Made by a program: the position numbers and the translations under genes. A stretch of 63,711 nucleotides of DNA, filler included, from Octopus bimaculoides (lineage: Eukaryota), in the NCBI RefSeq assembly GCF_001194135.2. It is 6 parts of 6 records of this genome, joined end to end, with 100 filler letters (N's around TTAATTAATTAA, not from the genome) between each part and the next. Parts side by side here need not be neighbours in the genome. Positions count along the whole stretch, not along the records: positions 1 to 15,379 come from NC_068990.1; 5 more parts are not named here. The stretch is one strand, 5' to 3'. The notes below the pieces were generated by a model, which was given only the letters and a program-made list of their open reading frames with translations, was not told where the DNA came from and did no database searches. Positions 1-28,049 of the stretch are shown here, one piece after another; position 1 is the first letter of the stretch, and every line of letters starts with the position of its first letter.

Positions 1-28
1 ATATATATATATATATATATACACATAT

Positions 29-196
29 ACGACGGGCTTCTTTCAGTTTCCGTCTACTACCAAATCCACTCACAAGATTTTGGTCGGCCCGAGGCTATAG
101 TAGAAGACACTTGCCCAAGGTGCCATGCAGTGGGACTGAACCCGGAACCATGTGGATGGGAAGCAAACTTCTTACAACACAGCCACGCCTACGCCA
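29..196 (-). mobile_element. tRNA-derived SINE, family A (head and core)
   Basis: Reverse complement closely matches the plus-strand copies at 46709 and 58592 (tRNA-like head, B-box-like GGTTCAGTCCC, ggcaccttgggcaagtgtcttctactatagcctcgggccgacc core). Confidence 0.85.
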
Positions 197-462
197 AGGT
201 TTTTTTTTTTTTTTTAAGAGGTTATGGAATAATAGATTTGGTACAGCGTTAGATTCAGGAAATTTAGATATAATGCTGCCCTGGCCCGACTTTGTCTTTT
301 ATTCATGAGAGTTGGATTTATTGAGTACCAAAAGATTACTGGTCAGTCGATCCGTTCGGCTGTTCAATTCTCCCCAATTACTGACTTTAGGAAATCGATA
401 TTATATGTATAATCTCGTGTTCTACTGACGCATTGATCTTACCCATCCATCTATGACAGATA

Positions 463-537
463 GGTAGATGAACAGAGAAGAAGAAGAAGAAGAAGAAGAA
501 GAAGAAGAAGAAGAAGAAGAAGAAGAAGAAGAAGAAG

Positions 538-568
<31 letters not shown>

Positions 569-570
569 GC
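463..570. repeat. (AAG)n followed by (AAC)n compound microsatellite
   Basis: Directly visible; produces the spurious poly-F/poly-L ORF at 387-725. Confidence 0.95.
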
Positions 571-1033
571 AACGAGACAAACATAAATAATTTAGGGTTC
601 TCGTTTTTTCTAAGACATGCTATATACTTTATAGATTCAGCGCGTCTAATAACAGTATCTAAAAATAGTTGTTTTTTAATTGATAACTTCAGCAAGGCAA
701 TGGGTTGGTATATTGTCCGCCTCACTCACTATTCATCTGTCTTATTCTTACCACCAGCTGCTTCCTTTACTAACAGATGTCACGCCTGAGCACTCAACAC
801 TCTCATACATATATAGCTGACGGTGAGGAGGTTAAGAAATCTAAAACTACCTGAACTTCAGTCAGTTTAGTGTTGGCAGATGGATATCAGTTAACGACTA
901 GATACATCTGCGACGTTGGAACATTTATTTATCTACTCATCTTACATGTTTTCAAGATTTGCTGCAAAGAATTTGGTGTGTTGAGAGTGTAAAAAGAGTA
1001 AAGTGGAAGGTAGCTAATGCAGACAAATGCAGG

Positions 1034-1800: not shown

Positions 1801-2160
1801 AAAGAGATTGGAGTATGCTGGTGATCGACTTCATGACAATCAATCTTGTGGCCTTTCTCTGGATGTTTGTTAGAAATTGCTAAAACAGTTGAAGAAATAT
1901 ATCTTTATTTGAAATAATTAAGATTCTAAAATACTCAGACATTCGTATACACTCTCAGACACATATTCAGAAAGACTCGAGCGAGAGCGCATATACGCAC
2001 ATACATGCTGTAATAGAAATATTGCAACAAAAACCTAAGAAAATATAAAGTACTAAAAATATCGTTTTTTTCTTCAGTGAGAGGATCCATCAAGACTGTG
2101 GTCAGTGGAAATTTGTGCGGCGAAGAATAAAGTAAACCCGTAGATTAACTAGGATTAACC

Positions 2161-4144
2161 ATGAGTTGGCATCATCTCAAATCACTCAACGAAGACAAAG
2201 AAATGTAAGTAACGCATTTTTTGGTAGATTCTTTACTTGATAATCTTTGTTCACTAGAGAAACGTCAGCAGCATAATGGAGTGTTTCAACAAGCGATTCA
2301 CCAGGCAAATTGACGTATTTCCAGATAATGAGTATTGCAATAGCAAGAACCCAACTGCGTGGTACATTGAGTATGTAGGTGTCTAACACGGTCTAAGATT
2401 GAACGTGATCTTGTGAGTGAAATACATACAGTGCAGACAGGGCTGGATTAAGACCCACAGAGACCCAAAACGTTTAAAAGATTTTGGTGCCTCAATATTT
2501 CCTTTTGGCGGTAAAAATTCGTTTCGTTGCCCTTGACAATAAACTTTCTATTTTCTATTTTATGTCAGTTGCCATAACAACATTTCTCTTCCAGATGTAG
2601 CTCTGTCACCAATGGTAATGTATTGCTGTTGTTGTTGTTTAGATCAATACCAAATCTGTCTTCGATCTGTCTTCTATCATTCATAACAAGCCAACCTTTT
2701 AAAATTGGTTTGGTTTTCCAGGAGACGTTAGATATGTTATATATTCTGTGAGGGTGTATATATATGTATATATTCTGCTATGAATAGTATTTTGTGGACA
2801 CGAAGAAACTGTATATATTGTGTCATGTATGTAGAAGCTAAAACACAAGATGGCCTTAATTAAAACAATATAGTTTTCAAAGTGATCCAACATAATATAC
2901 ACTCTATAAATGTGTAGATTCTAACAACAAGCAATTTTTCCAATTGTGTACCCCGTGTATTTCTGTGTTGACCCACTTTCCTCAATGCCCTACTCATGTA
3001 CTTATTTTGCTTAATGGTTAGTGCAGGGCATAGGGTTGATGGTACTAGGGGACAATATAAATTTCGACTCCCTTATAATTTTTTTTTAATGTTGACATGG
3101 AGAGAAAACTTCAGAAATGAAAAAAAGAGAACAGCTCAAAAGCAGCATCAAATCTTCAAATCGTTTCATCAATATAACACTGGGTACACAACCGGCAAGA
3201 ATCTCAGCGTATTTGCACACAAATACTAAATGGAAGGTGAATGGGTGTAGAGTGCTGTCGATCTGTAAATATAGTCCGTCATTGACGAAATCAAGAAAGG
3301 TCGAAATCATAAGATCTGGTGGTCTCGGCGCTAGAGGTGGCGGGGATTTATCTCCTTGCTGGCTATATAATCAAGAGGGCATTTTGCACCAAAAGCCAAT
3401 ATCAGAACTTCTCTCGTGGTATCTACCGCAGTATAGTTTGTTCTAAAAGAACATCTATGTTTAAGTGGGCATAAATATTATCTCTTGGCATTAATACTGC
3501 CTCTGTCGCTAATATATAGTATTTTTTAAATCAAATTTTCACCTAATAAATAAAATATGACTCAAAGAATACGTACGCTTGGAGGCATACATTATCCTTA
3601 CCAAAACAGCTTTTTTAGACTTTAAATCAACAAACATTCCCTCAGAACTTCTGTATCCAATTTGTTTTTATGACATTTTTTATGACAGAATTGTCAAAGA
3701 ATTTAATCTGTTTGTGTATTTCGAAGAACATAAAGACATGCTGTAGTGCTTCCTGGCATGTCACGCACCAGGTGACTTCTTGACTTACTGGTACTTTCAG
3801 CCAACACTGGATAAACATACGACGGACTTCCGCACAATTTCTAGCTTAGAAATTTAACAAACAAGGCATTGGTCAACCTACGGCAATGGTGGAAGACGTT
3901 AATCATGTAGATATATATCTGGAAATAGCCAATTTATTAGATGAGCTCTTTGTTAAACATATCTTCGAATCCCACCATATATATATATATATATATANNN
4001 NNNNNNNNNNNNNNNNNNNNNNNNNNNNNNNNNNNNNNNNNNNNNNNNNNNNNNNNNNNNNNNNNNNNNNNNNNNNNNNNNNNNNNNNNNNNNNNNNNNN
4101 NNNNNNNNNNNNNNNNNNNNNNNNNNNNNNNNNNNNNNNNNNNN

Positions 4145-4178
<34 letters not shown>

Positions 4179-7100
4179 TATGTGCGCGCGCGTGTGTGTA
4201 TGTATGCATGTGTGTGCGTGTGCATGTACGTGTATGCGCGCGTGTGCATATGTATGTATGTATTATGTTAGTACAACGAAAATGAGTCAAGAGAAATAAC
4301 TCAGAATGGCCAGTGAAATGAATGTGAAACGATAAAGATGAAGTTGTACTAATTGCCATATAAGATAAATTATTGATTTATTGTGATACTGAAGTTATCT
4401 TCGTTTCGAGAGAAGATGAACAAACACCTAGCGATAACTGCAACCGACTCCGAATGAGAAGCGGTTATAATCTCAAGAAATCAACAATTCACCGGAATAT
4501 GGAGATAACGTGTTTGCAGATAGATTCTGAATAAGTTTACATGTATACTTTCAATCAGCATACAATTGACCATGCTTCATAAAGAGAGCTGGTGGTAAAC
4601 CAAATAAGCTTCTACAGGACGATCCAAAGCATCACTTAATTGGTTTCGCCTGGTTATTGCTGGTTCATCATGAGTGTCTACTTCGTTGTTCAACAGAAAA
4701 CGACATTAACTTACAACTAATGAAGAATGCTAAGTGTAGCTGGCACTGATTTTCATAGAGGTACATTTATTAAGACGGCGAACTAGTAGAATCGTTAGCA
4801 CATTGGACAAAATGCTTTTGGGAGGAGCTTCTCATTAAACTCCTGAATTCATTTCCTACATACTGGAGTATTCATTGGTTACGACATTGAGTGTTCCAGT
4901 TGATTCGATTAACGGAACAGCCTGCTCGTGAAATTAACGCGCAAGTGGTTCAGCACTTAACAGAGTTCTCAAGGGGACACACTGAATGTCAAGGCTGGCC
5001 CATTGAAATACAGATACAACTTATTTTTGCCAGTTGAGTGGGGTGGAGCAACGCGAAATAAAGTGTCTTGCCCAAAGACACAAACAACGCACCGCTAGGA
5101 GTCGAACTCACGACCTTTCAATCATGGGTCGAATACACTAAGCCACTCGTCTTCTTGCAACGCTTGATCCATACAAGAAATATGTTTTGAGTACGTCCTA
5201 AGGTTTTTATCCAGTTTAGCTGTAGCTCAGTTTTGAAACTGAAGTAGTGGGGGGAAAATCGAATATAACAATTAACATTGTCTCTGAAAATGCAAGCCGA
5301 CACACCATCGGAATGAAAGACATTGTAGGTTGTGCCCCAACTCCATCTCTTTAAAAGATATTACCTCTTTTTTTTTTTTTTCATTTAGGATGCAGAGTTC
5401 ACTGAACAAAAGCAGAATGAAGAATGCAAAATTATTTGATGAAATATCTGACTTAAGCAAAGAAATATATAGATACAAAAGACGTCTTGAAAGAGCATAC
5501 AGACCAATTGATACTACTTATGAGGCAAAACCGAGGCGCCCAGTTTACGATAGTTATTCAACACTAAGATGCCCTGAAATATATTATCATGCACCTTCTT
5601 ACGGTTTTTACGATGGAGACTGGGAAGTAAGTTAATTTTAAATAAGTTATTTTTTCATCACTTTATTCATCACAAATTGGTTTTAATGTCGTTTAATTTT
5701 TGCAAAAAAAGATACCTAAATGTTCCATCTTCTGTTGAAATTTGCCCTTTTATATGGTACTACTATTCATTTACCGTTGAAAGTACTCTGTATCGGAACA
5801 TGATTTTTGCATTTTCTTATAATACACCTCGATACATCACGTCAATGCAGACTTTCACTATTATAATCGCATTTTAGTAATTATAGTAATTATTCTTTTA
5901 ATAAGTAATTGATTATCTGCGAAGCGTCCAGAGTTATATCCAAACGGTGTTAGGATGATGAAACAATATAACTGTAACTATTAACAATAATATTTTGAAA
6001 GATAGTCCAGTTCTGTATGGTATTTCGAAGCTCAGTCATGAATTTCTAATGTTAGATCGGGCACTGCTACTGACACATAGTATTGGTAATTCCATTTACG
6101 AAACGTCCAAGAACTTGCTAAAGTTCTTCTCTTCCATTCCTTTAGTTTTCTTTAATGCAACAATACATGTGGCTTCTTAAACATGTTTGTAGCAATTACA
6201 TGGAGGACATTTGCCGAGTATATCTGACAATTATAGTCTATAATATACATGGAGTGCATTTTGTTCTTGTTCGAAAATACGCGCGCGCGCGCGAACGTTA
6301 AGCTGGATTGAATGAATGAGAGAAGAGCACTCAATATGTTGTATAGAATATAAGGTTTTACTGAACTGAATGTTATCTCGCGATTTGAGTTTCAAATCAC
6401 TGCGATCTTCAGGTAAGAACTGTTACAAATAGGTTTGATAGTATATTCGTATTCGTTGGTATCCCTGTGATCACATCTTGTATTTCTTCATGGGTTTGCG
6501 TAAGGATTTGCTTTTATTTTTCTGCCTTATCAGAGAGTAATTTTTTTTTTTTTCTGATGGATTGATTGTTTGTTGCTGATAAAGGGTCTGCTTTTCATTT
6601 GTTATCTGTATATTCTGCTATTTTAGTTAAAGCTGTATTTTGAACTATCAAGTTACTTAAATGTCTAGATGTCCACTTCGTGGAATATTTCAAAGAGATG
6701 AACCTTTGATTTGTCACACTGAGCTATTAATTGTACTCTAGCGAAATGAATGTATTATATCATCAAATCGAATTTATCAAACACATGAGCGCTGTCCTCG
6801 GTATCCAAGGACGAGATAAGCTTTTAATGCAGAAATTCTTCACTTAACAAAAATTCGTTGAGTGGAAACCCTTCTTAATCTGCGTTTTATGGTGAATTAA
6901 ATACAAATACTGGTGGTAGTAATCATTACAGACAACGTTTAAATAACTGTATCAAACGCCTTAAAAACATAAAGCTATCAATTCTGATACTGGGATAGAA
7001 ATTTGACTGACTGTTTGGATAGAATAGCTTCCTCTAAGCTTACGTTCATTCTCTGGCACTTGAAGCTAGAGGAATTAGTTTACAATAAAGAGTTGTGTTA

Positions 7101-7480
7101 AAATACAAACATTCATGATAATGAATTTATATATGTATATATGTATGTACGCATGTATATATGCATACATATATGCATACATACATACATACATACATAC
7201 ATACATACATACATGCATACATGTGTGAGTGTTTGCCTATGCAAACATATGTATGATTAAATATGTATTAAAGTTTTTCATGAATGGGAATCTATTTACT
7301 TTGAATCTCACTTTTTTGTGTATTATATAAATGATTTCAAAGAAATCGCATTTACTCTCTATTTTTCCATAGATAAAAAGAGCTCCAGCCCCTGCAGACC
7401 CTATTGTCCAGAAGTCGTACCGAACTAAAGACGGAGTTTTACACCATATTTATACAGTAAAATCTGCACTTAAGTATTAA
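2161..7480 (+). CDS. Spliced orphan-like gene, 129 aa: MSWHHLKSLNEDKEMMQSSLNKSRMKNAKLFDEISDLSKEIYRYKRRLERAYRPIDTTYEAKPRRPVYDSYSTLRCPEIYYHAPSYGFYDGDWEIKRAPAPADPIVQKSYRTKDGVLHHIYTVKSALKY; coding exons 2161-2204, 5389-5626, 7373-7480
   Basis: Exon A: acceptor tttttttcttcAG at 2077, accATGa start at 2161 with in-frame TAA at 2146-2148, donor AT|gtaagt at 2204/2205. Exon B: T-rich tract then cattTAG at 5388, donor GAA|gtaagt at 5626/5627. Exon C: ttttccatAG at 7372, open to TAA at 7478-7480, AATAAA at 7965 and 8056. Phases (2, then 0) are mutually compatible and the joined frame has no stop. Confidence 0.7.
3336..3464 (+). promoter_or_regulatory. Possible alternative promoter and first exon (GC box, TATA, ATG TTT AA|gt) for the 2161-7480 gene
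   Basis: GGTGGCGGGG at 3336-3345, CTATATAA at 3363-3370, ATG at 3457, then AA|gtgggc at 3464/3465. The phase-2 end matches the exon at 5389 (would give MFKMQSS...). The donor is weak. Confidence 0.3.
4880..5155 (-). mobile_element. Diverged tRNA-derived SINE with a family-B-like 3' part and CORE-like middle
   Basis: gttccagttgattcgattaacggaacagcctgctcgtgaaattaacg matches the 36065 copy; ggagcaacgcgaaataaagtgtcttgccc is CORE-like; tRNA-like head near 5090-5150. Confidence 0.7.
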
Positions 7481-8906
7481 AATACTTAAAGAATATAAAC
7501 TATTCTGTCCAGAACTTACATTAGTAAACACTTTGAAAATATGAAGTAACTTATAACAGTGATTATTTCAGTTGAATTTTTTTTCATTTGCCTGTCGACA
7601 TTAACAACTAATATTGCTATTTATTTGGTTCAATTTCATATTTAACATATTAAAATGCTGGAGAATATCTTCGGCGAGAAGAAGCAATATTTTAAATCCA
7701 GTATTGAAAGACAATAACAACCGGAGAAAAGAAATGGATTTGAAAGTTGGCTTTCACCCTGTTTAACGACCACGCTTACTTTCTGCTTATTTTCTGACAG
7801 AATGTTCCGACTTGTATAAAAGCAGTTTCTAACATACAATATTGTTATAATGCATTCCTTGCAAGAAAATAAGAAATATATTTAAAAAATGTAAATGCGT
7901 CAAAAATATTGTTTGGTAATTATAATGCATTCGTAACTTTATGTAATAACATAAATTTCCATAAAATAAATTGATATACCATCTTACAAGCATTCTGTTT
8001 AAACATCATTAACGAATGTTGAAAAATAATGTATTCCTGATATAAAGCTTAAGAGAATAAAACATCATTTATGTATGGAATGAATAATCTTATTGATTAT
8101 TTTTAGCGATATAAAGTGGAAGTAGTTAAACTTAAAACAGATGATATTTTCAAGAAATTCAGGACATTGAAAACATTGATCATAAAACAACGTAAAAGAT
8201 TTAGTTCTAATTGAAAATTTTAATTTAATGAATTAATGCATGTGGTAAATACATATGAAAGTGAAATTCTAAACGAAGCCAGAGACATAATGGAGAAATT
8301 TTCGTTTCAATCCAAATAACGAATTAAATGGCAATTTTAAAAGAAGGAACATGGTTGTTTATTTATTGATTTTAATGAGAGACAATCCCCAGAGTTGGAC
8401 AGCTTTTCAGCTGAGACAAAAATTGCGATAACTTTCGGTTTTGCATTTACTTTGAATTAAATCTGAAAGAAATGTTTTTGCTATAGCTCTAATTATAGTT
8501 TATAATTTTCAGTGGAGGCTCTGTATTTAGGTATTTTATTTCACTTTTCAATGTTTCGTGTTTCAACTTCTACTGAAATTACTCAAAAGCCAGTATACAC
8601 GGAATGAATCATGCAAACCCCAACAGATAGGTTGTAATGATAAATGGAGATATCGTACTTTCTTTATACAGCATTACATAAAAAAATACTCAAGTCAAGT
8701 ATTCATTGTCGATATTATTCCAACTATTCCCAAGGATTCAAACTTATCAAAAGGCGATTTCTTCGATATTATTTTCTGAAATAGTTCAAGTTTATAAAGA
8801 TCCTGCTCTCTCTTCAAGAAATCGCCTGTCTCTTAATCCTTACCTCACGCACATACACGCCTAAAAGTTTACATATGTGTACACACACACACACACACAC
8901 ACACAG

Positions 8907-9050
8907 TGTCGACGCGTAGTCTAGTAATCACGAGCATAATACCGGGCTTCAATTCCTTCCTGGACCGAGCCGCGCCTTATGTCCTTGAGTAAAGTACTTC
9001 ATTTCCCGTTGGTCTAGTATACTCAATTTAAATTAATACCAACTGGTGCA
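8907..9050 (+). mobile_element. Diverged tRNA-derived SINE head between (CA)n and (CT)n
   Basis: A-box-like gcgtagtctagt, B-box-like ggcttcaattcc, then ttatgtccttgagtaaagtactt core-like sequence. Confidence 0.5.
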
Positions 9051-9123
<73 letters not shown>

Positions 9124-9302: not shown

Positions 9303-10380
9303 TGTTGCCATCCGTTCATCCATCTTCTTCGCCCAGTGTTCCTGAAAGTGTCTCCCTTCTCTTTCTCCTTCTCTCTCTCTCATCCTTCGTATATTTGTTT
9401 CTTCCACTTGTTTTTGTCGGCAACCTGTAGTTCCCAGTTGTGAAGGTCGAAATCGAATTGCAACAGCGAGTCTTTGACGCAGTCCTTGAAACGCTTTTTA
9501 GGTTTTTGCTAAGGCTTCTTTCCTTCAGTCAGCTCTTTGTAAAAGCATCTGCTTGGAGATACGACTATCGTCCAACCGTATCAGATGTCCTGCCCAGCGA
9601 AGGCGGTGCTTATGTGTATGAGTTTCTATGCTGAGTGTATCAACTTCTTCCAGTACCTCTGTGTCTGGAACATGTAAGGTCCAGTGAATGCTCAAGATCG
9701 ATCTCAGGAAGCACAGGTGGAAGCGCTCCAGTAGATCTAAATGTTTCCTGTAAACCACTCGAGTTTTGCAAGAGTAAAGAAGGCTTGCGAGAACAAAGGC
9801 ATTTCAGACATCTATCTTCGTTTTCTTTTCCAGGCTTTTCTGATACGTGGTCTTGAAGAACAGAAAAGGCGCCAGTGGCTTCCTTAAGTCGGGGAGTTAT
9901 TTCATCGTCGAGGGAACATTGATGGTTTATCGTGCTACCGAGATAGATGAAGTTGTCAACAACCTTCAGCTTCGCATAGGCTGTACCAAGTGCTGGTTGA
10001 AACATGACAATTATTTTATCCAAACTGATAGTCAGACCAAAGGTTGTGCATGACGGGGACAACTTGTCCATGAATCACTGTATAACTGTGGTAGTGTACG
10101 AGACCAGGTCGTAGTTATCGGCGTAGAAGAGATTGCAAGCAATAGTTAGGACATTCGATTTAGTAGCAAAGAAGCGTATGTTGAAAAGCTTGCCTGTGCT
10201 GCGATAGCGTACATACAGACCTCGGTTACAGCTTTTGAAGGCGTCAATAAGAACAATAGAAATGGAAAACAAAGTTGGTGCAACCGTGTCTCCCTGTTTA
10301 ACACAATTCTCTACTTTTATTGGTTTGGATATAATGCCTCCAACATACACAGATGCCTCCATGTCATCTATATGATGACA
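9303..10380 (-). mobile_element. RTE-clade LINE, 5'-truncated, degenerate reverse transcriptase C-terminal half
   Basis: Frameshifted ORFs carry VKQGDTVAPTLFSI, LFYADN, FGLTISLDKI, FIYLGSTI, LERFHLCFLRSIL and HRLRWAGHLIRLDDSRISKQML, all typical of RTE/BovB-type RT. Confidence 0.9.
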
Positions 10381-10777
10381 TGACGGACAAATTGAGAGAG
10401 AAAAAGAGAAGGGAGGATTGGGCACCAGCCCTGAAGTTATGTTATGGATAGACAGGCAGATTTTACGAGAATTATAATGATGTTTATAAAAGAGCCACAG
10501 ATAACTGATTGTAAAATAAAAGTGTAATTTAAGAAAACTCATTGGGTAAAAGAATAGAAATGAATTATTTGAATAGAAATATCGAATAGAAAGTAGACAA
10601 AAGAATCATGGGGGTGGAAAAGGAAAACGAAAAGTAATCTCTTGGAACAATTTGTTCAATGTTTAACATACCAAATCAGAAAGAGGCCTCAAAATCCTGA
10701 AACTCCACCAGCTCTTAGAAAATATTCTCAACAGCATGATAGAATGTCAGAAAATATCAAAGTTCTTGTTTTTGTTT

Positions 10778-10960
10778 AGCCCCAGGTCAACCCTGATTGA
10801 GCAGATCCATGATCAAAAGCATTCCACACATGATTATCTCGTTTCTAATTTTTCAGGACTACATTATCAATTCTGTCGTCTTTGTTTTAAAGATAGTAGT
10901 GTGATCTAAGTTAGGTATAGTTGCTATTTATAGCAGGTTGGGTGACTACGTTGAGGTTCT
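10778..10960 (+). repeat. Unclassified interspersed repeat (further copies at about 36795-36875 and 36982-37160)
   Basis: Shared tttagccccaggtca start and gctatttctagcaggtyg segment between copies. Confidence 0.55.
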
Positions 10961-12389
10961 CACGTTGATTTGATTAGAAACACCGCCACGAAAATGTTGT
11001 CCCGGTTGTACTCGGAATGCTAACAAAAGATCCAGATATAACCGTAAAATTGAAAAATAAGTACGTAAAAATCTTGTGGAAGTGATTTTAAAGTAATTTC
11101 GATTATCAGAATTCTGATATTCAGTCAAGTGAACTACATGTTTATCAAATTAACGTGTATCAGGTACAACCAACGCAACACATTGGGACAAGTTTGAACC
11201 TTTAAATCACAGGTGTGGTTTATCCGACGGACTTCTATGACGCTTACATCAATATAAATTCCCTCACAAGGTTTGAGTCAACTGTAGGCTATGGCAAAAG
11301 ACGCTCGTCCAGATTTTCTCGAAGTAGGATCGAAGCTGGGACTTTATGAATTATGAAGCAGGCATTTTAGTTACAGTTAAGGAACTATGATTATAGATAT
11401 AATTGTCTTAGATATACAGGGTGTTCGAGCGAAGGTTGTAGTTGAGAAAAACTTAGCTGATATGGAGGACTGGAAGTCTTCTGAGAATTGGAAAAGAGTT
11501 ACCTGTATCACGATGATACGTACTGAGTATCAAAATACTAATATCAATGCTCTGAGAACACTTCGCTATAAAGGCTGTAAGACGTGACATGGATAGTTGC
11601 AACGGAGACCACGAAGCCGTGGCCAGCATGAAGGGACACAGTAGGCATTCTGACTGCATCCATACGTCAAAATTCACCCTCCATATCTTTGAAAAGGAAC
11701 CTATGTATGCATATCATTATTATTAATAATATTATATCATATTAAATGCATGGTTTTGTCTTTTCCAAACTGAAAACATAAACGTTTCATGACAAAATAA
11801 TATTTCTAAAAGAACACTCCAACTGTTCAATAACTGATTGGGGAAACCGTACAGAGCAAACTCAAACATAACAAAATCGTGTTTAAATTAATTCATTACC
11901 GCTACTACTATTACTCCAATTAGTGAAGAACCGTTCCTTTCCCACTATCCACCTCAATCTGAATGTATACCTCGCAGCTCCATGATAAATCTGCCAATCG
12001 TAAATAAAGTAAACGCAACCTAAAAGTACACCGCTATTCTCAACGCGAGACATTATGCATATACAGTGACTACAACTTCACCTATTTACCAGTAACAAGA
12101 CGAATAGTTCATACAAGCAACCCCAGCCAACGCCAAATCACACATCTCACAATATCACCACCACCACCACCAAATACTAAATCAAACTTAATAGCTTCTA
12201 CAAGTGTAATCCGGAACCCTAAAATGTTCCGCAAGAGATTATGTCTGAAGCGTGATTGTCCCTTCCAGTGACTCGACCATTAAAAGCCAGCACTAAATTC
12301 ACAGTGCTGGTCCAGACTTTCCCAGAAACTCAGGGCCGCTATCTGACAGATTTTTTGCCGTGCTTCTGGCAGTGGAGACCTCCAGCTTC

Positions 12390-12630
12390 TTTGATGTATC
12401 CTACGAGCCTTCGTGACAAGAGAACTGATAGTTATGTTGACTCTATGGAAAACCTTTGTTCTGAGAAGATTAAATTACTGCTCACAGTTCTGGTCTCCAA
12501 CTCATCTGGTTTCATACAAGAAATTGAAGGGTTACAAAGTACATTTGCCAGTAAAATAACTTCGGTTAAAGGCCTTAATAATGACCGGGAACGTCAGAGT
12601 GCTCTGCGTCTCTACCCTTTTAAAAGCTGG

Positions 12631-12710
<80 letters not shown>

Positions 12711-13105
12711 ACGGACAGACAGACAGAGATAGACAGACAAACAGACAGATTGAGACAGAGACACTATCATATATGTATGGAAAATCCTGGACGGGCTTGT
12801 TCCAAAGTGCGGCATTAGATAGGGTTTCAAAACACGAGCTGATAGATAGTCAGCTTGCAAATATACCACCTTCGAAATCACAAACAAAAACACTCTATTT
12901 TTACTAATCTGTTATTAAGGGTCCTGAATTGTTCGACTGCCTACTTAAAGAAATCAGAAATATAAAAGGGACGTCTACTGAAAGATGAGAAAAACATTGG
13001 ATAAACTCCTAACAACGATACCAGACCACCCAACCGTTCAAGGATACACTCAGGGAAGATCAACGGCTACAAAATCAATCGTAGACCAACTTCGCGCCAT
13101 AAAGT
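12390..13105 (+). mobile_element. CR1/L2-type LINE 3' fragment, interrupted by an (AG)n/(AGAC)n expansion
   Basis: Degenerate motifs ILRAFVTRE..MLTLWKTFVLRRLNYCSQFWSP, EIEGLQSTFASKI, LRLYPF..KRER[microsatellite]IIYVWKILDGLVP and GPELFDCL; same C-terminal style as 34195-34568. Confidence 0.8.
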
Positions 13106-14563
13106 GACAAACCTGGCAGTAGTTTACTTTGCTTGCAATATATAGGAAACACGGTGTGGTACAATCATAGATTTTGTAACTAGAAGACTAGTTAGAAAAT
13201 CTATTCGAGATAGAAGCAGTATACGAACAAAAAAGTGTTGCTTATGGCCACTTTAATGTGGCTGTCTTCTAAGAGACGATGATACTGCCATTTAACTCCA
13301 GGAAGACATCTCCTCCAGCTGGTTTTCCATGCCAGGTAACGAATACCCATCACCGAGGAGATGCAGTACATATCGAAACCACGTAGCCTGGTGGTTTTGA
13401 AGCTAGGGTGACATGAGTTATCTCCCGCTTGCAATAAATATTGAATATATATATTGAATTATAGAAGTTTTCTTTAGGAAACTTAACTAGTAACTGTTGG
13501 TGCTGCCACCTACAGTTGCTTTCGGAAAAAGAGAGGGGGTGAAGAAGAGTTTACTAAGAAATAAAAGATAGGATGAAGTTTCCCTTTAAGAGGAGAGAAC
13601 TGCTCAGGTTTTATATATATGTATATTTATTATTATGAGAGGTCTTTTTCTTAAGAGAGAGAGAAAAAGAGAGCGTATGAAATGATATTTCCATATAATC
13701 CATTTTTGTTTCCATTTTAAGTGAAATTTTGTTTGTTTCGTGAGCAAGATATACACAAGCCTTGTGATAACTACAACCGACCTAGAATGAAATAAGAGAT
13801 GATCTATTGTCCAAAATTGACATGTTATTAAAGAAGAGTTAGTGTTTTGTCTAGAGACAAGAGGACATCTGTGACACATGTTTCTGCCTTTATAGAAGTT
13901 ATCTCCACAGCAGTAACTAGATGCATATACTTAGATGCATACACATAGACTTATGCATATACATAAACTTATGTGTAACTAGGTGCATACACATAGACTT
14001 AGGTGCATATACAAAAAGAGTAGAGGATATTTATGGCTTTGTGTAATTCAGCGAGGCACAAATCAAAATATATCAATGTAGATAACATCATTTATAAAGG
14101 AAAAGAAGGTGGAAGAGCAAAAAACATGGTGGTGCGATATATAATATTCATCCAGCGAACATGTTTCGCATGATAATCATAAGTGCCACTGAAAGTTTTA
14201 CAAGGACAAAAAGATAAATGTGAAGGAGAAACATTAGCTGAAGCAGTAACATCAACACCTAATAAAATTTTGTAAATATTTGTAATATTAATCATCGTTA
14301 ATTATAGTGTACCCATCCTGTTTGTGCTTTCTAAATCAGCGTCCTCTTCAATGGCGTCACGATCCTTTCGATTCACTAGCTGATTGAAATAAATCTCTAG
14401 TAGAAACAAGAGGAACATCTTGAACTGAAGTACTTCCTCGTGATTTTTCTAAAAACACATCCTCTACTTGCATGCGATGTGAAATCTAGTAAATGAAAAT
14501 AGGTCCGGGAGTAAAAATGAAACCTCTGTAACCAGTAGAATCCAATCCATTCTTGGACTGGAC

Positions 14564-26227: not shown

Positions 26228-28049
26228 GTAACAACAGCTTATCCGGGGTTAATAACGCTTGATACGAAACCAAAAGCTCTGTAGAGGGTCTATCATGCAA
26301 TTTTTCTGTTTTTAACCTTAATAGCTTCGCCCGCGACCTGTCATCAAATTTTCCACATTAATCCACCACCGCAGTATATTTTTAAATGTTCTTATATCTC
26401 TCACCTTATTACGTTCTTTCCAAAAACTGAAAGGTTTTAGCAAATTCAGATGAGGGATATTTTTGTTGTTAGACAATATCTTGCCTTAGTAATGCTGGGG
26501 CGACAGGTTTGGGGAGCTTCAGTTGCTCTCAAATTAATGTTGCACTCTTGCAGTTTTGTGCTGTTGTTAGGAAGCCTGGGGAAGTGATCTGATATCTGAC
26601 ATTGCCTGGAAACCAGCCTTCACAAGCTCTGAAAGGAGGGCAATACATCAAGTTGTAGATATTGAATGCATAATATAAAACTTATATATTGAGGGCTGCA
26701 ATAAAGAGAGTATATATGAAGGACTGAAAACAATTCCTCTTTTTAACAATATTTTCAGAAATATTTTAATAATTCTAAAAATATTACTTTAGTTTCTTTA
26801 CTTGTTTTAACACTTCAGTAAAGCATAAACAATAAAGTTCCTATGAATTAGATATGAAACAAAACGCTATTTTCATATAAATTTGTAGCATTTATTGTTT
26901 CTATCATAAAACGTTAACTATATTTTGTATCTTTCAATAACATTTCTGGTATTCAGAAAAATTAAAGATACATTTCCTCCGTGTTTATTTTTCTCTTTCT
27001 TTTTCTTTTCTTTAAACTGCGTTAACAATGTTGTTTGATGTATACATTTCAAAATCTCAATTTACCATGAAATAGGAAATTGTAATATTGATTTTGAAGA
27101 AAAGATGATAACGTTTACCCTTATGAAATATCTCACCCGATTTTCTCAGTCACTGCTAATAAGTAACAAATATACTTGCATAATACTCACAAATATTCAT
27201 ATATCTATGCAACTATTTCTGTACACACACAAACACACACACACAAACATGCACACCCTTACACATACACTCACACATACACTCACTCACACGCACACAC
27301 GCACGCACACAAGCACACGCACACAATCACACACATATATATACAATTAAAGTTACTAAACTATAGTGTTAAAACACTCACTGCAACGGTACAGATGTGA
27401 ATACGTCTGCTAATTATATCCGAATAGAGAAAAATAAACGACATTCTCCGGACATATTTCAAGCTTTGTTGACTCGATCACCCATGATCTATTACTGTCT
27501 TTCTGCACAGAGGAACAAGTGGTTTTACAGCTCTTCTAATTAGTCATAATTCAACTGCAAAACATGTCCGGGCAATCTCCTCTAATATTTGTTATTCTCC
27601 ATAAAATGTAATTATGGATATATGACTGTGTGTATGTTTCTGTATATGTGTGTGTTTAAAATTCCGTATTAAAATGTAGATTAAATATTTGAGTCTTACC
27701 GCGTAATGAAAATTTTGTAAAGCATTTCAAAATGTACTCTACAAACCAGCTGTATGTACGACAATTCCTTGTCTTTATCATAGGCTTTCAAATACACATT
27801 AAGTCACACGTAATCCATATCTAGTCATTTTAGCAGAATCATTGGTGCATCACAGGAAATGTGTAATATATATTTCTTGCTATCTACCTTCTGAATTAAA
27901 ATTCCTTCAACTTTGAATTGCCTTCATTCATTTCAATATCGATAAAAAATGGTAGACAAGTACTTTGGAGGTGATGTAATCAACCTACACCTTTCCCTAA
28001 GATTGATGGCCTTATGTCAATATTTGAAATTATTATCATCATCATCATC

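What the first reader, a model, noticed from the sequence alone, without database searches (positions are those of the whole stretch)
2078..7480. Unannotated-looking 129-aa coiled-coil, Tyr-rich protein gene hidden by splicing
Seen: three exons with consensus splice sites and compatible phases (2161-2204, 5389-5626, 7373-7480). The ORF track catches only the middle exon. The product has a heptad-like N-terminal half (LNEDKEMMQSSLNKSRMKNAKLFDEISDLSKEIYRYKRRLE) and a Tyr/Pro/Arg-rich C-terminal half (13 Tyr in total). I recognise no domain or family. Inference: a lineage-restricted (possibly cephalopod-specific) small protein. Short basic Tyr/Pro-rich proteins with a helix are often sperm/ciliary or structural proteins, but function is unknown.
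Basis: partly seen in the sequence, partly recalled or inferred. Interest (0 to 1): 0.7.

Follow-up and report, generated by a model that had tools for sequence, protein, structure and literature searches.

The report
Small cephalopod-only coiled-coil protein gene
The three exons form a real, conserved octopus gene for a small helix-plus-tail protein found only in octopuses and a few apparent cephalopod relatives; it is already in public annotation as an uncharacterised protein and its function is still unknown.

Summary
Exons 2161-2204, 5389-5626 and 7373-7480 (+ strand) have ATG, GT/AG borders and compatible phases. They give a 129-aa product identical to RefSeq XP_014786747.1 / UniProt A0A0L8FUI8, "uncharacterized protein LOC106881054", Octopus bimaculoides. 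So the gene is already annotated, but nothing is known about it.

Octopus vulgaris, O. sinensis, Argonauta hians and an unlabelled genomic contig have the same three coding exons in the same phases. cDNA contigs from relatives run straight across both junctions. dN/dS is 0.11-0.38.

The assembly gap lies inside intron 1, in a microsatellite. Its flanks are collinear with the sister species.

Searches of 5.8 billion and 1.84 billion proteins found seven clusters in all. Pfam, PDB sequences and Foldseek gave no match.

The product is basic and has no signal peptide. It has a conserved 6.5-heptad helix ending in YKRRLERAYRP, a variable Tyr/Pro-rich disordered linker, and a conserved C-terminal beta-hairpin.

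My best guess, which is inference only, is a dimeric coiled-coil adaptor. This is a sound but ordinary lineage-restricted orphan gene.

The parts
2078..2160 (+). Probable 5' UTR part of the exon that carries the ATG. It starts just after a conserved acceptor-like site (ttcttcag|TGA), which implies a further non-coding exon upstream of the window.
   Evidence: The same polypyrimidine-CAG|TGA is present in O. sinensis and Argonauta. In the non-octopod relative L009, cDNAs of two different sequence types (L010-L012 and L005) stop aligning at 6858|6859, 115 nt 5' of the ATG and just after a polypyrimidine tract with AG. This is inferred for O. bimaculoides. The upstream exon was not found in the DNA held.
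2161..2204 (+). Coding exon 1: codons 1-14 plus two bases of codon 15 (MSWHHLKSLNEDKE, M split). Donor is gtaagt.
   Evidence: An in-frame TAA lies 15 nt upstream. The same exon end and phase occur in L001, L002, L003 and L009.
2205..5388 (+). Intron 1 (3184 nt as assembled, GT...AG). It contains the assembly gap 3998-4144, inside a (TA)n/(GA)n microsatellite.
   Evidence: The gap flanks are collinear with O. sinensis and O. vulgaris. The equivalent sister-species stretch has stops in all three frames.
5389..5626 (+). Coding exon 2: last base of codon 15 through codon 94. It encodes most of the heptad helix, the invariant block YKRRLERAYRP (residues 44-54, 5474-5506) and the Tyr/Pro-rich linker.
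   Evidence: This is the only part caught by the ORF list. It aligns to Argonauta DNA at 75%.
5627..7372 (+). Intron 2 (1746 nt, gtaagt...ccatag, phase 0).
7373..7480 (+). Coding exon 3: codons 95-129 plus stop TAA (7478-7480). It encodes the conserved C-terminal block P..DP.V.K.....DG....I.TV.S (residues 101-125, 7391-7465), predicted to form a beta-hairpin.
   Evidence: It aligns to Argonauta DNA at 83%.
7481..8699 (+). Probable 3' UTR. The block 6712-8699 is the best-conserved stretch against O. vulgaris and O. sinensis (91-93%, against 85-93% in the other aligned blocks). Candidate poly(A) signals lie at 7649, 7965, 8056, 8323 and 8456. The true extent is not established.
   Evidence: In relatives, the 3' UTR is contiguous with the last coding exon.
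8035..8215 (+). Non-coding block conserved between Octopus and Argonauta (about 76% over about 180 nt although dS is above 1.2). It is probably a 3' UTR regulatory element.
   Evidence: There is no Rfam match and no unusual RNA folding on either strand (z = -0.64 and +0.14).

Best explanation
SHOWN. This is an authentic, single-copy, spliced protein-coding gene of Octopus bimaculoides (RefSeq LOC106881054). It has three coding exons and is under purifying selection. It belongs to a tiny family known only from octopods and a handful of unlabelled relatives.

The 15.4-kDa product is basic (pI 9.4) and has no signal peptide or membrane segment. It has three modules:
1. Residues 3-51 form one long helix with an unbroken a/d heptad pattern over 6.5 heptads. 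The helix ends in the invariant YKRRLERAYRP.
2. Residues 55-100 form a Tyr/Pro-rich, low-confidence (disordered) linker. Its length varies through duplication of a (I/V)YYRPPVYD(E/S)Y-like unit.
3. Residues 101-125 form a conserved block, predicted to be a beta-hairpin.

INFERRED. The helix pairs with a second copy, or with a partner helix, as a coiled coil. The basic helix end and the C-terminal hairpin then act as docking surfaces for another protein or polymer. The linker is a flexible, evolvable spacer. On this reading it is a small intracellular adaptor or scaffold, not an enzyme or a secreted peptide.

I put the reality of the gene at about 0.97 and the dimeric-adaptor mechanism at about 0.5.
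For: - Gene model: splice sites and frame were read directly. The product is identical to XP_014786747.1 / A0A0L8FUI8.
- Orthologues: O. vulgaris/O. sinensis (128 aa, 92%) and Argonauta hians (186 aa).
- Exon structure: the same three exons, phases and GT/AG borders occur in L001-L003 and L009.
- Splicing: cDNA contigs L004-L005 and L010-L013 are uninterrupted. They map to genomic L009 in blocks that break at the two coding junctions.
- Selection: dN/dS is 0.13 (O. bimaculoides vs O. vulgaris, dS 0.22), 0.17 (vs Argonauta) and 0.11-0.38 among the other relatives.
- Synteny: the flanks are collinear with sister species, and no second copy was seen in the DNA held.
- Heptads: positions a = 6, 13...48 and d = 9...51 are 67% core-hydrophobic across 7 sequences, against 14% elsewhere.
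- Structure: AF2 gives a helix at 3-51 (pLDDT about 90), low confidence at 59-101 and a hairpin at 104-111/117-123 (pLDDT 57-83) in two runs.
- Conservation: invariant columns cluster at residues 44-54 and 101-125.
- Localisation: the maximum 15-residue hydropathy is 0.24, so there is no signal peptide or membrane segment.
Against: - There is no direct evidence on oligomeric state, partners, localisation or tissue.
- Several core positions are polar (K13 invariant at a, S/C23 at d, N/R27 at a). This is compatible with a dimer, but also with a single helix lying on a partner.
- Hairpin confidence is only moderate, and it fell when the alignment was deepened.
- No O. bimaculoides RNA-seq was available here. 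Splicing in this species rests on annotation identity and on relatives.
Confidence: 0.55

Rival explanations
1. It is a structural protein that binds along a cytoskeletal polymer, for example a ciliary or sperm-flagellar microtubule inner protein, or a muscle or intermediate-filament accessory protein. The long helix would lie on the lattice as a single helix, and the Tyr-rich segments would insert between subunits.
For: - The composition is basic and Tyr/Pro-rich, with a long helix followed by extended segments.
- Complete mRNAs assembled from mixed marine metatranscriptomes in several samples, which hints at fairly high expression.
- A published survey reports that genes dating to the octopod ancestor peak in male reproductive tissue (PMC7656900).
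Against: - A profile search of all PDB chain sequences found nothing better than E = 0.13. From my own knowledge, not checked here, the PDB includes doublet-microtubule cryo-EM models with many inner proteins.
- Foldseek found nothing.
- Cilia and flagella are ancient, yet this family is absent from all other animals searched.
- The regular a/d core is more typical of a coiled coil.
Confidence: 0.2
2. It is a small nuclear or nucleic-acid-associated basic protein. The KRRLERAYRP patch would act as a nuclear localisation or nucleic-acid contact site at the end of a dimerising helix, as in a zipper-type regulator.
For: - pI is 9.3-9.9 in all members.
- An invariant Arg/Lys-rich block lies at the end of the helix.
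Against: - No bZIP, HLH or other DNA-binding family appeared in Pfam, even at E up to 10.
- The basic block follows the zipper, whereas in bZIP proteins it precedes it (from established knowledge).
- Nothing explains the conserved C-terminal hairpin on this reading.
Confidence: 0.12
3. It is a secreted neuropeptide or hormone precursor related to the CCAP precursor.
For: There is a weak Pfam hit to PF11105 (CCAP): E = 0.0038, 17.6 bits, in 2 of 7 members.
Against: - The score is far below the curated cut-off of 27 bits.
- The match covers only the helical region, against the C-terminal end of the model.
- The N-terminus is hydrophilic, so there is no signal peptide.
- No Cys-bridged peptide core is present: Octopus has a single Cys.
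Confidence: 0.01
4. It is not a functional gene but a chance ORF, a pseudogene or a transposon fragment.
For: The window is rich in repeats (SINE-like element, microsatellites, species-specific insertions) and the exons are short.
Against: - The locus is single-copy and syntenic.
- Identical exon phases occur in five genomes.
- dN/dS is well below 1.
- Spliced cDNAs exist in relatives.
- Only the exons and one 3' block remain alignable with Argonauta.
Confidence: 0.01

Closest known systems
RefSeq LOC106881054 / XP_014786747.1 (UniProt A0A0L8FUI8), uncharacterized protein of Octopus bimaculoides, and its orthologue LOC115215725 of O. sinensis and O. vulgaris
   Same: LOC106881054 has the identical 129-aa sequence. 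LOC115215725 is 92% identical, with the same three coding exons.
   Different: Nothing differs: this is the same gene. Public records carry no function, domain or family name. None of the accessions appears in the searchable literature.
Argonauta hians GAB1602985.1 (186 aa)
   Same: The N-terminal helix and C-terminal block are the same (62% identity over aligned columns). Intron positions and phases are the same.
   Different: Exon 2 is 60 codons longer because the Tyr/Pro unit (YYRPPVYDEY / YYRPPVYDSY) is duplicated, with Pro-rich spacers. The protein ends in ...SAL.
Short dimeric coiled-coil (leucine-zipper-type) adaptor proteins in general
   Same: It has a continuous a/d heptad core over about 46 residues. 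Octopods have an Asn at one a position, as in GCN4-type parallel dimers (the comparison comes from established knowledge).
   Different: There is no sequence or fold match to any such family. The Asn is Arg in the non-octopod members. The oligomeric state is untested.
Ciliary/flagellar microtubule inner proteins and other small Tyr-rich structural proteins
   Same: Small size, basic charge, a helix followed by extended Tyr/Pro-rich segments.
   Different: No detectable homology to any PDB chain. The taxonomic range is far narrower than that of cilia.

Membership tests
LOC106881054/LOC115215725 orthologue group (undescribed cephalopod orphan family) | Significant full-length sequence similarity to the other members | tested here: met
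   E = 9e-75 (Octopus), 4e-38 (Argonauta) and 5e-13 to 1e-64 for the others, with full-length coverage.
LOC106881054/LOC115215725 orthologue group (undescribed cephalopod orphan family) | Three coding exons, with intron 1 after the second base of codon 14 or 15 (15 in O. bimaculoides and L009) and intron 2 in phase 0 before the C-terminal block | tested here: met
   The same positions and phases occur in the window, L001, L002, L003 and L009.
LOC106881054/LOC115215725 orthologue group (undescribed cephalopod orphan family) | Invariant motifs Y-x-R-R-L-x-R-A-Y-R-P and P-x-D-P-x-V-x-K...D-G...I-x-T-V-x-S | tested here: met
   Invariant columns in the 7- and 8-sequence alignments.
Coleoid-cephalopod-specific gene | Present in decapodiform cephalopods; absent from Nautilus and from non-cephalopod animals | tested here: inconclusive
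   No hit outside the family in 5.8 billion or 1.84 billion proteins. The non-octopod members come from unlabelled runs (ERR1712142, ERR1711900, SRR24189493/498/505, ERR4030420, ERZ21867824), and their taxon could not be read here. Small genes are also often missed by annotation.
Coiled-coil dimer | Continuous heptad repeat with a hydrophobic a/d core | tested here: met
   67% core-hydrophobic at a/d against 14% elsewhere, in one register across residues 6-51, in 7 sequences. AF2 predicts a helix at 3-51.
Coiled-coil dimer | Self-association in solution | not testable with these tools
   This needs SEC-MALS, AUC, cross-linking or a multimer prediction. Only single-chain prediction was available.
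Microtubule inner / sperm-ciliary proteins | Homology to a protein seen in solved axoneme structures | tested here: not met
   The best profile hit against all PDB chains was E = 0.13, to unrelated proteins. The best Foldseek hit was E = 2.6.
Microtubule inner / sperm-ciliary proteins | Expression in testis or ciliated tissue | not testable with these tools
CCAP neuropeptide precursor (PF11105) | Score above Pfam's gathering threshold, a signal peptide and a Cys-bridged peptide core | tested here: not met
   17.6 bits against a cut-off of 27. The N-terminus is hydrophilic. The Octopus protein has a single Cys.
Transposon-derived ORF | Multiple copies, transposon protein domains or non-syntenic positions | tested here: not met
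   The locus is single and collinear in sister genomes. There are no Pfam domains. dN/dS is 0.13-0.17.

The most novel reading that the evidence does not exclude
The family arose in the coleoid cephalopod ancestor, either de novo or by divergence beyond recognition. It would encode a new kind of small dimeric adaptor whose conserved basic helix end and C-terminal hairpin dock onto a cephalopod-specific cellular structure, for example in the nervous system, skin or muscle. That would make it a tractable handle on one cephalopod innovation. The conserved 3' UTR block would then point to tight post-transcriptional control.
Probability: 0.12. Interest if true: 0.55.

Novelty: already known. Interest (0 to 1): 0.25.

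Why it matters
Practically, this confirms that a tool-free reader can recover a short three-exon gene exactly, and that the public model is right.

Biologically, it defines a very small, apparently cephalopod-restricted protein family with a clear three-part architecture. The family is under purifying selection, and no function, domain or literature exists for it.

Published work already reports lineage-specific genes in cephalopods (PMC7656900), so one more is not surprising. This one is short, single-copy and well conserved. It would be easy to test by expression profiling, interaction mapping or knock-out in a model squid.

Tried and rejected
- Pfam scans of the protein and of all 7 family members gave only sub-threshold coiled-coil noise: CCAP, DivIC, ACBP4_C, Cep57_CLD_2 and COG6_N.
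- PDB sequence searches with the single protein and with the profile gave nothing below E = 0.07.
- Foldseek of the AF2 model against the PDB gave a best E of 2.6.
- In the exhaustive HMM search, P0004 (1455 aa, E = 4e-54) is a tandem-repeat artefact: 18 weak matches to EISDLSEKEI summed. P0006-P0008 are long coiled-coil proteins. All four were rejected as homologues.
- A third profile search with 8 sequences added no members.
- A literature search for the six accession and gene ids found 0 papers.
- A search for the run accessions found only an unrelated venom-display paper that uses ERR1712142 as a peptide label. The taxon of the non-octopod members therefore stays unread.
- No shared repeats between L009 and the octopod loci gave a taxonomic clue.
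- The upstream non-coding exon seen in the relatives' cDNAs was searched for in the window, L002, L003 and L009 and not found.
- The conserved 3' block was tested as a structured RNA or miRNA hairpin. Rfam found nothing, and the fold z-scores were -0.64 and +0.14.
- The reverse-transcriptase-looking ORFs at 9525-10542 (- strand) gave no Pfam hit even at E up to 10.
- No tRNA genes were found.
- PPxY (WW-binding), W-acidic (kinesin light chain) and C-terminal PDZ-ligand motifs were considered from memory. None is conserved across the family, so all were dropped.


Full report
**1. Observation**

The three proposed exons are exactly as described.
- An ATG at 2161 is preceded by an in-frame TAA 15 nt upstream. 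Coding exon 1 ends at 2204, followed by gtaagt.
- Exon 2 (5389-5626) follows a T-rich tract ending in ag and is followed by gtaagt.
- Exon 3 (7373-7480) follows ttccatag and ends in TAA.
- The phases fit: two bases of codon 15 lie in exon 1, and intron 2 is in phase 0.
- The joined CDS is 390 nt and gives a 129-aa product with 13 Tyr.
- The mechanical ORF list shows only exon 2, inside ORF 5330-5635.

**2. The gap**

The N run at 3998-4144 lies inside intron 1, so it cannot change the reading frame.
- Its left flank ends in (TA)n and its right flank begins with (GA)n.
- Window 2757-3997 and 4180-4775 align collinearly to O. sinensis L002 13054 and 13177 onwards, and equally to O. vulgaris.
- Those species have about 120 nt of (TA)n plus stop-filled sequence between the two points.
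- The two sides are therefore continuous, and nothing suggests a hidden exon.

**3. Identity**

The exact 129-aa sequence is in public databases as XP_014786747.1, "uncharacterized protein LOC106881054 [Octopus bimaculoides]", and as UniProt A0A0L8FUI8. The window is therefore O. bimaculoides, and the gene is already annotated but uncharacterised. None of its accession numbers, or those of its orthologue, appears in the searchable literature.

**4. Relatives and gene structure**

*Octopod orthologues.* O. vulgaris and O. sinensis have a 128-aa orthologue (92% identity). Argonauta hians has a 186-aa one. I fetched their loci and located the exons. All have the same three coding exons, the same phases and GT/AG borders.

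*More distant relatives.* An exhaustive HMM search of 1.84 billion representative proteins added one more distant relative (P0005, E = 5e-13, full length). Profile searches of 5.8 billion proteins added P0009, P0010, P0011 and P0012. A third search with all eight sequences added nothing.

*Sources of the relatives.*
- P0005 and P0011 come from ERR- and JGI-numbered mixed-community assemblies. From memory these are Tara Oceans metatranscriptomes; I did not verify that.
- P0009 and P0010 come from RNA-seq runs SRR24189493/498/505 and ERR4030420.
- All four sit on short intron-free contigs.
- P0012 lies on a 297-kb genomic contig (L009, ERZ21867824). There I found the same three coding exons: 6974-7017, 10066-10303 and 11725-11829, with the same phases.

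*Splicing.* The cDNA contigs align to L009 in blocks that break at those junctions. Splicing at the equivalent sites is therefore shown directly in relatives.

*Taxon.* The taxon of these non-octopod sequences could not be read. I infer that they are decapodiform cephalopods (squid or cuttlefish), for three reasons:
- Their identity to Octopus is 36-43%, against 62% between Octopus and Argonauta.
- They split into a set from mixed marine samples and a set from single RNA-seq projects or the genomic contig.
- No protein named by its source as coming from another animal matched.

**5. Selection**

Nei-Gojobori dN/dS values:

| Comparison | dN/dS |
|---|---|
| O. bimaculoides vs O. vulgaris (dS 0.22) | 0.13 |
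| O. bimaculoides vs Argonauta (dS about 1.3) | 0.17 |
| Among the non-octopod sequences | 0.11-0.38 |

Against Argonauta DNA, only exon 2, exon 3, one block 3' of the stop and a SINE-like repeat remain alignable. The locus is single-copy and syntenic. A chance ORF, a pseudogene and a transposon origin are excluded.

**6. An extra 5' exon**

cDNAs of two different sequence types (L010-L012 and L005) stop matching L009 at 6858|6859. That point is 115 nt upstream of the ATG and follows a polypyrimidine tract with AG. Their upstream 5' UTR sequence is conserved among the cDNAs but absent from the 6.8 kb held.

Octopus and Argonauta keep ttcttcag|TGA 83 nt upstream of the ATG in Octopus and at about the same distance in Argonauta. 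The gene therefore probably has a non-coding first exon outside the window. This is inferred.

**7. The protein**

There is no Pfam family above threshold in any member. No PDB sequence match was found with either the single sequence or the profile. There is no Foldseek match. The protein is hydrophilic throughout, with no signal peptide or membrane segment, and pI is 9.3-9.9 in all members.

Two AF2 runs agree on the architecture:
- one helix at residues 3-51, with pLDDT about 90;
- a low-confidence stretch from about 59 to 101;
- a hairpin at 104-111/117-123, with pLDDT 57-83.

Across seven sequences a single heptad register runs from residue 6 to 51.
- Position a reads L, K, L, N/R, I/V, I/L, L.
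- Position d reads L/I/V, M/A/T, S/C, L/I, L, Y, A.
- These positions are 67% core-hydrophobic, against 14% at other positions.

Invariant columns cluster in YKRRLERAYRP (residues 44-54) and in P101-x-D-P-x-V-x-K...D-G...I-x-T-V-x-S125. The linker varies in sequence and length. Argonauta carries 60 extra codons with duplicated YYRPPVYD(E/S)Y units.

**8. Mechanism**

What is shown is a conserved, expressed, intracellular small protein with a coiled-coil-type helix, a disordered Tyr/Pro linker and a conserved C-terminal module.

What I infer is a dimer or hetero-oligomer formed through the helix, with the basic helix end and the hairpin docking to a partner. That would make it an adaptor or scaffold. 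I put this at about 0.5.

The rivals are:
- a small nuclear basic protein (about 0.1);
- a CCAP-like peptide precursor, or a non-gene (each about 0.01).

Published work reports that octopod-age genes peak in male reproductive tissue and that many novel genes are neural (PMC7656900). The prior on tissue is therefore open.

**9. Verdict**

The gene model is already public. The family is undescribed and functionally blank, but it is one of many lineage-restricted cephalopod genes. Interest is low to moderate.

Noticed in passing
window 8035-8215 (+); L003 13102-13277: A non-coding block about 560 nt after the stop codon is about 76% identical between Octopus and Argonauta, although synonymous sites are saturated. 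It is AT-rich and full of stops. It has no Rfam hit and no unusual RNA fold. It is probably a conserved 3' UTR regulatory element.
   Followed up: partly
window 22-195: A SINE-like element starts ACGACGGGCTTCTTTCAGTTTCCG and includes GGGACTGAACCCGGAACC. It has further copies in the O. sinensis and O. vulgaris loci (L002 22696-22887 on the minus strand and 27862-28030) and, at 77-84%, in Argonauta (L003 9542-9658 and 12841-12913). There is no second copy in the window.
   Followed up: partly
window 9374-13966, incl. ORFs 9525-10542 (-): About 4.6 kb does not align to O. sinensis or O. vulgaris, which hold a different stretch of about 4.4 kb there. Minus-strand ORFs contain reverse-transcriptase-like strings (VKQGDTVAPTLFSI, FYADNYDLV; recognised from memory). 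Pfam gave no hit even at E up to 10, so a decayed LINE is only a guess.
   Followed up: partly
window 2756/2757, 4775-4815, 5827-5885, 6691-6712; L002 10579-11800, 13783-15567, 16560-17852, 19158-20385: Intron sizes differ widely among species: 3184/1746 nt in O. bimaculoides, 6102/4615 in O. sinensis and 534/989 in Argonauta. The Octopus differences come from four insertions or deletions of 1.2-1.8 kb.
   Followed up: partly
L003 10576-10993 (Argonauta exon 2): Exon 2 is 180 nt longer than in Octopus. This comes from duplicated (I/V)YYRPPVYD(E/S)Y units and Pro-rich spacers, so the disordered linker evolves by repeat expansion. Argonauta thereby gains two PPxY-type strings that Octopus lacks.
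   Followed up: no
C-termini of the family (window 7466-7477): Four of eight members end in S-x-V/L-COOH (Argonauta SAL; P0010, P0011 and L009 SEV), which resembles a class I PDZ ligand. The others carry 1-4 extra residues (Octopus ...SALKY, P0009 ...SQVY, P0005 ...SEVNYNY). The comparison is from memory and the pattern is not consistent.
   Followed up: no
L009 6858|6859; window 2077|2078: cDNAs of relatives show an additional upstream non-coding exon. It is conserved among them (…ACATCAGTAGGAACGACAAGCTTCTTGCTAAGG…CTTGAAG) but was not found in any DNA held. The octopod genes keep the matching acceptor.
   Followed up: partly
P0004: A 1455-aa protein made of 18 identical repeats reached E = 4e-54 against the 3-sequence profile, purely by summing weak matches to EISDLSEKEI. 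This shows that whole-protein E-values mislead for repetitive targets.
   Followed up: yes
window 387-725, 929-1283, 3960-4260, 9023-9110, 12640-12760: There are many simple repeats: long poly-T/CTT runs, (TCTA/ATAG)n-type, (TA)n, (GA)n and (TG)n. One of them caused the assembly gap.
   Followed up: no
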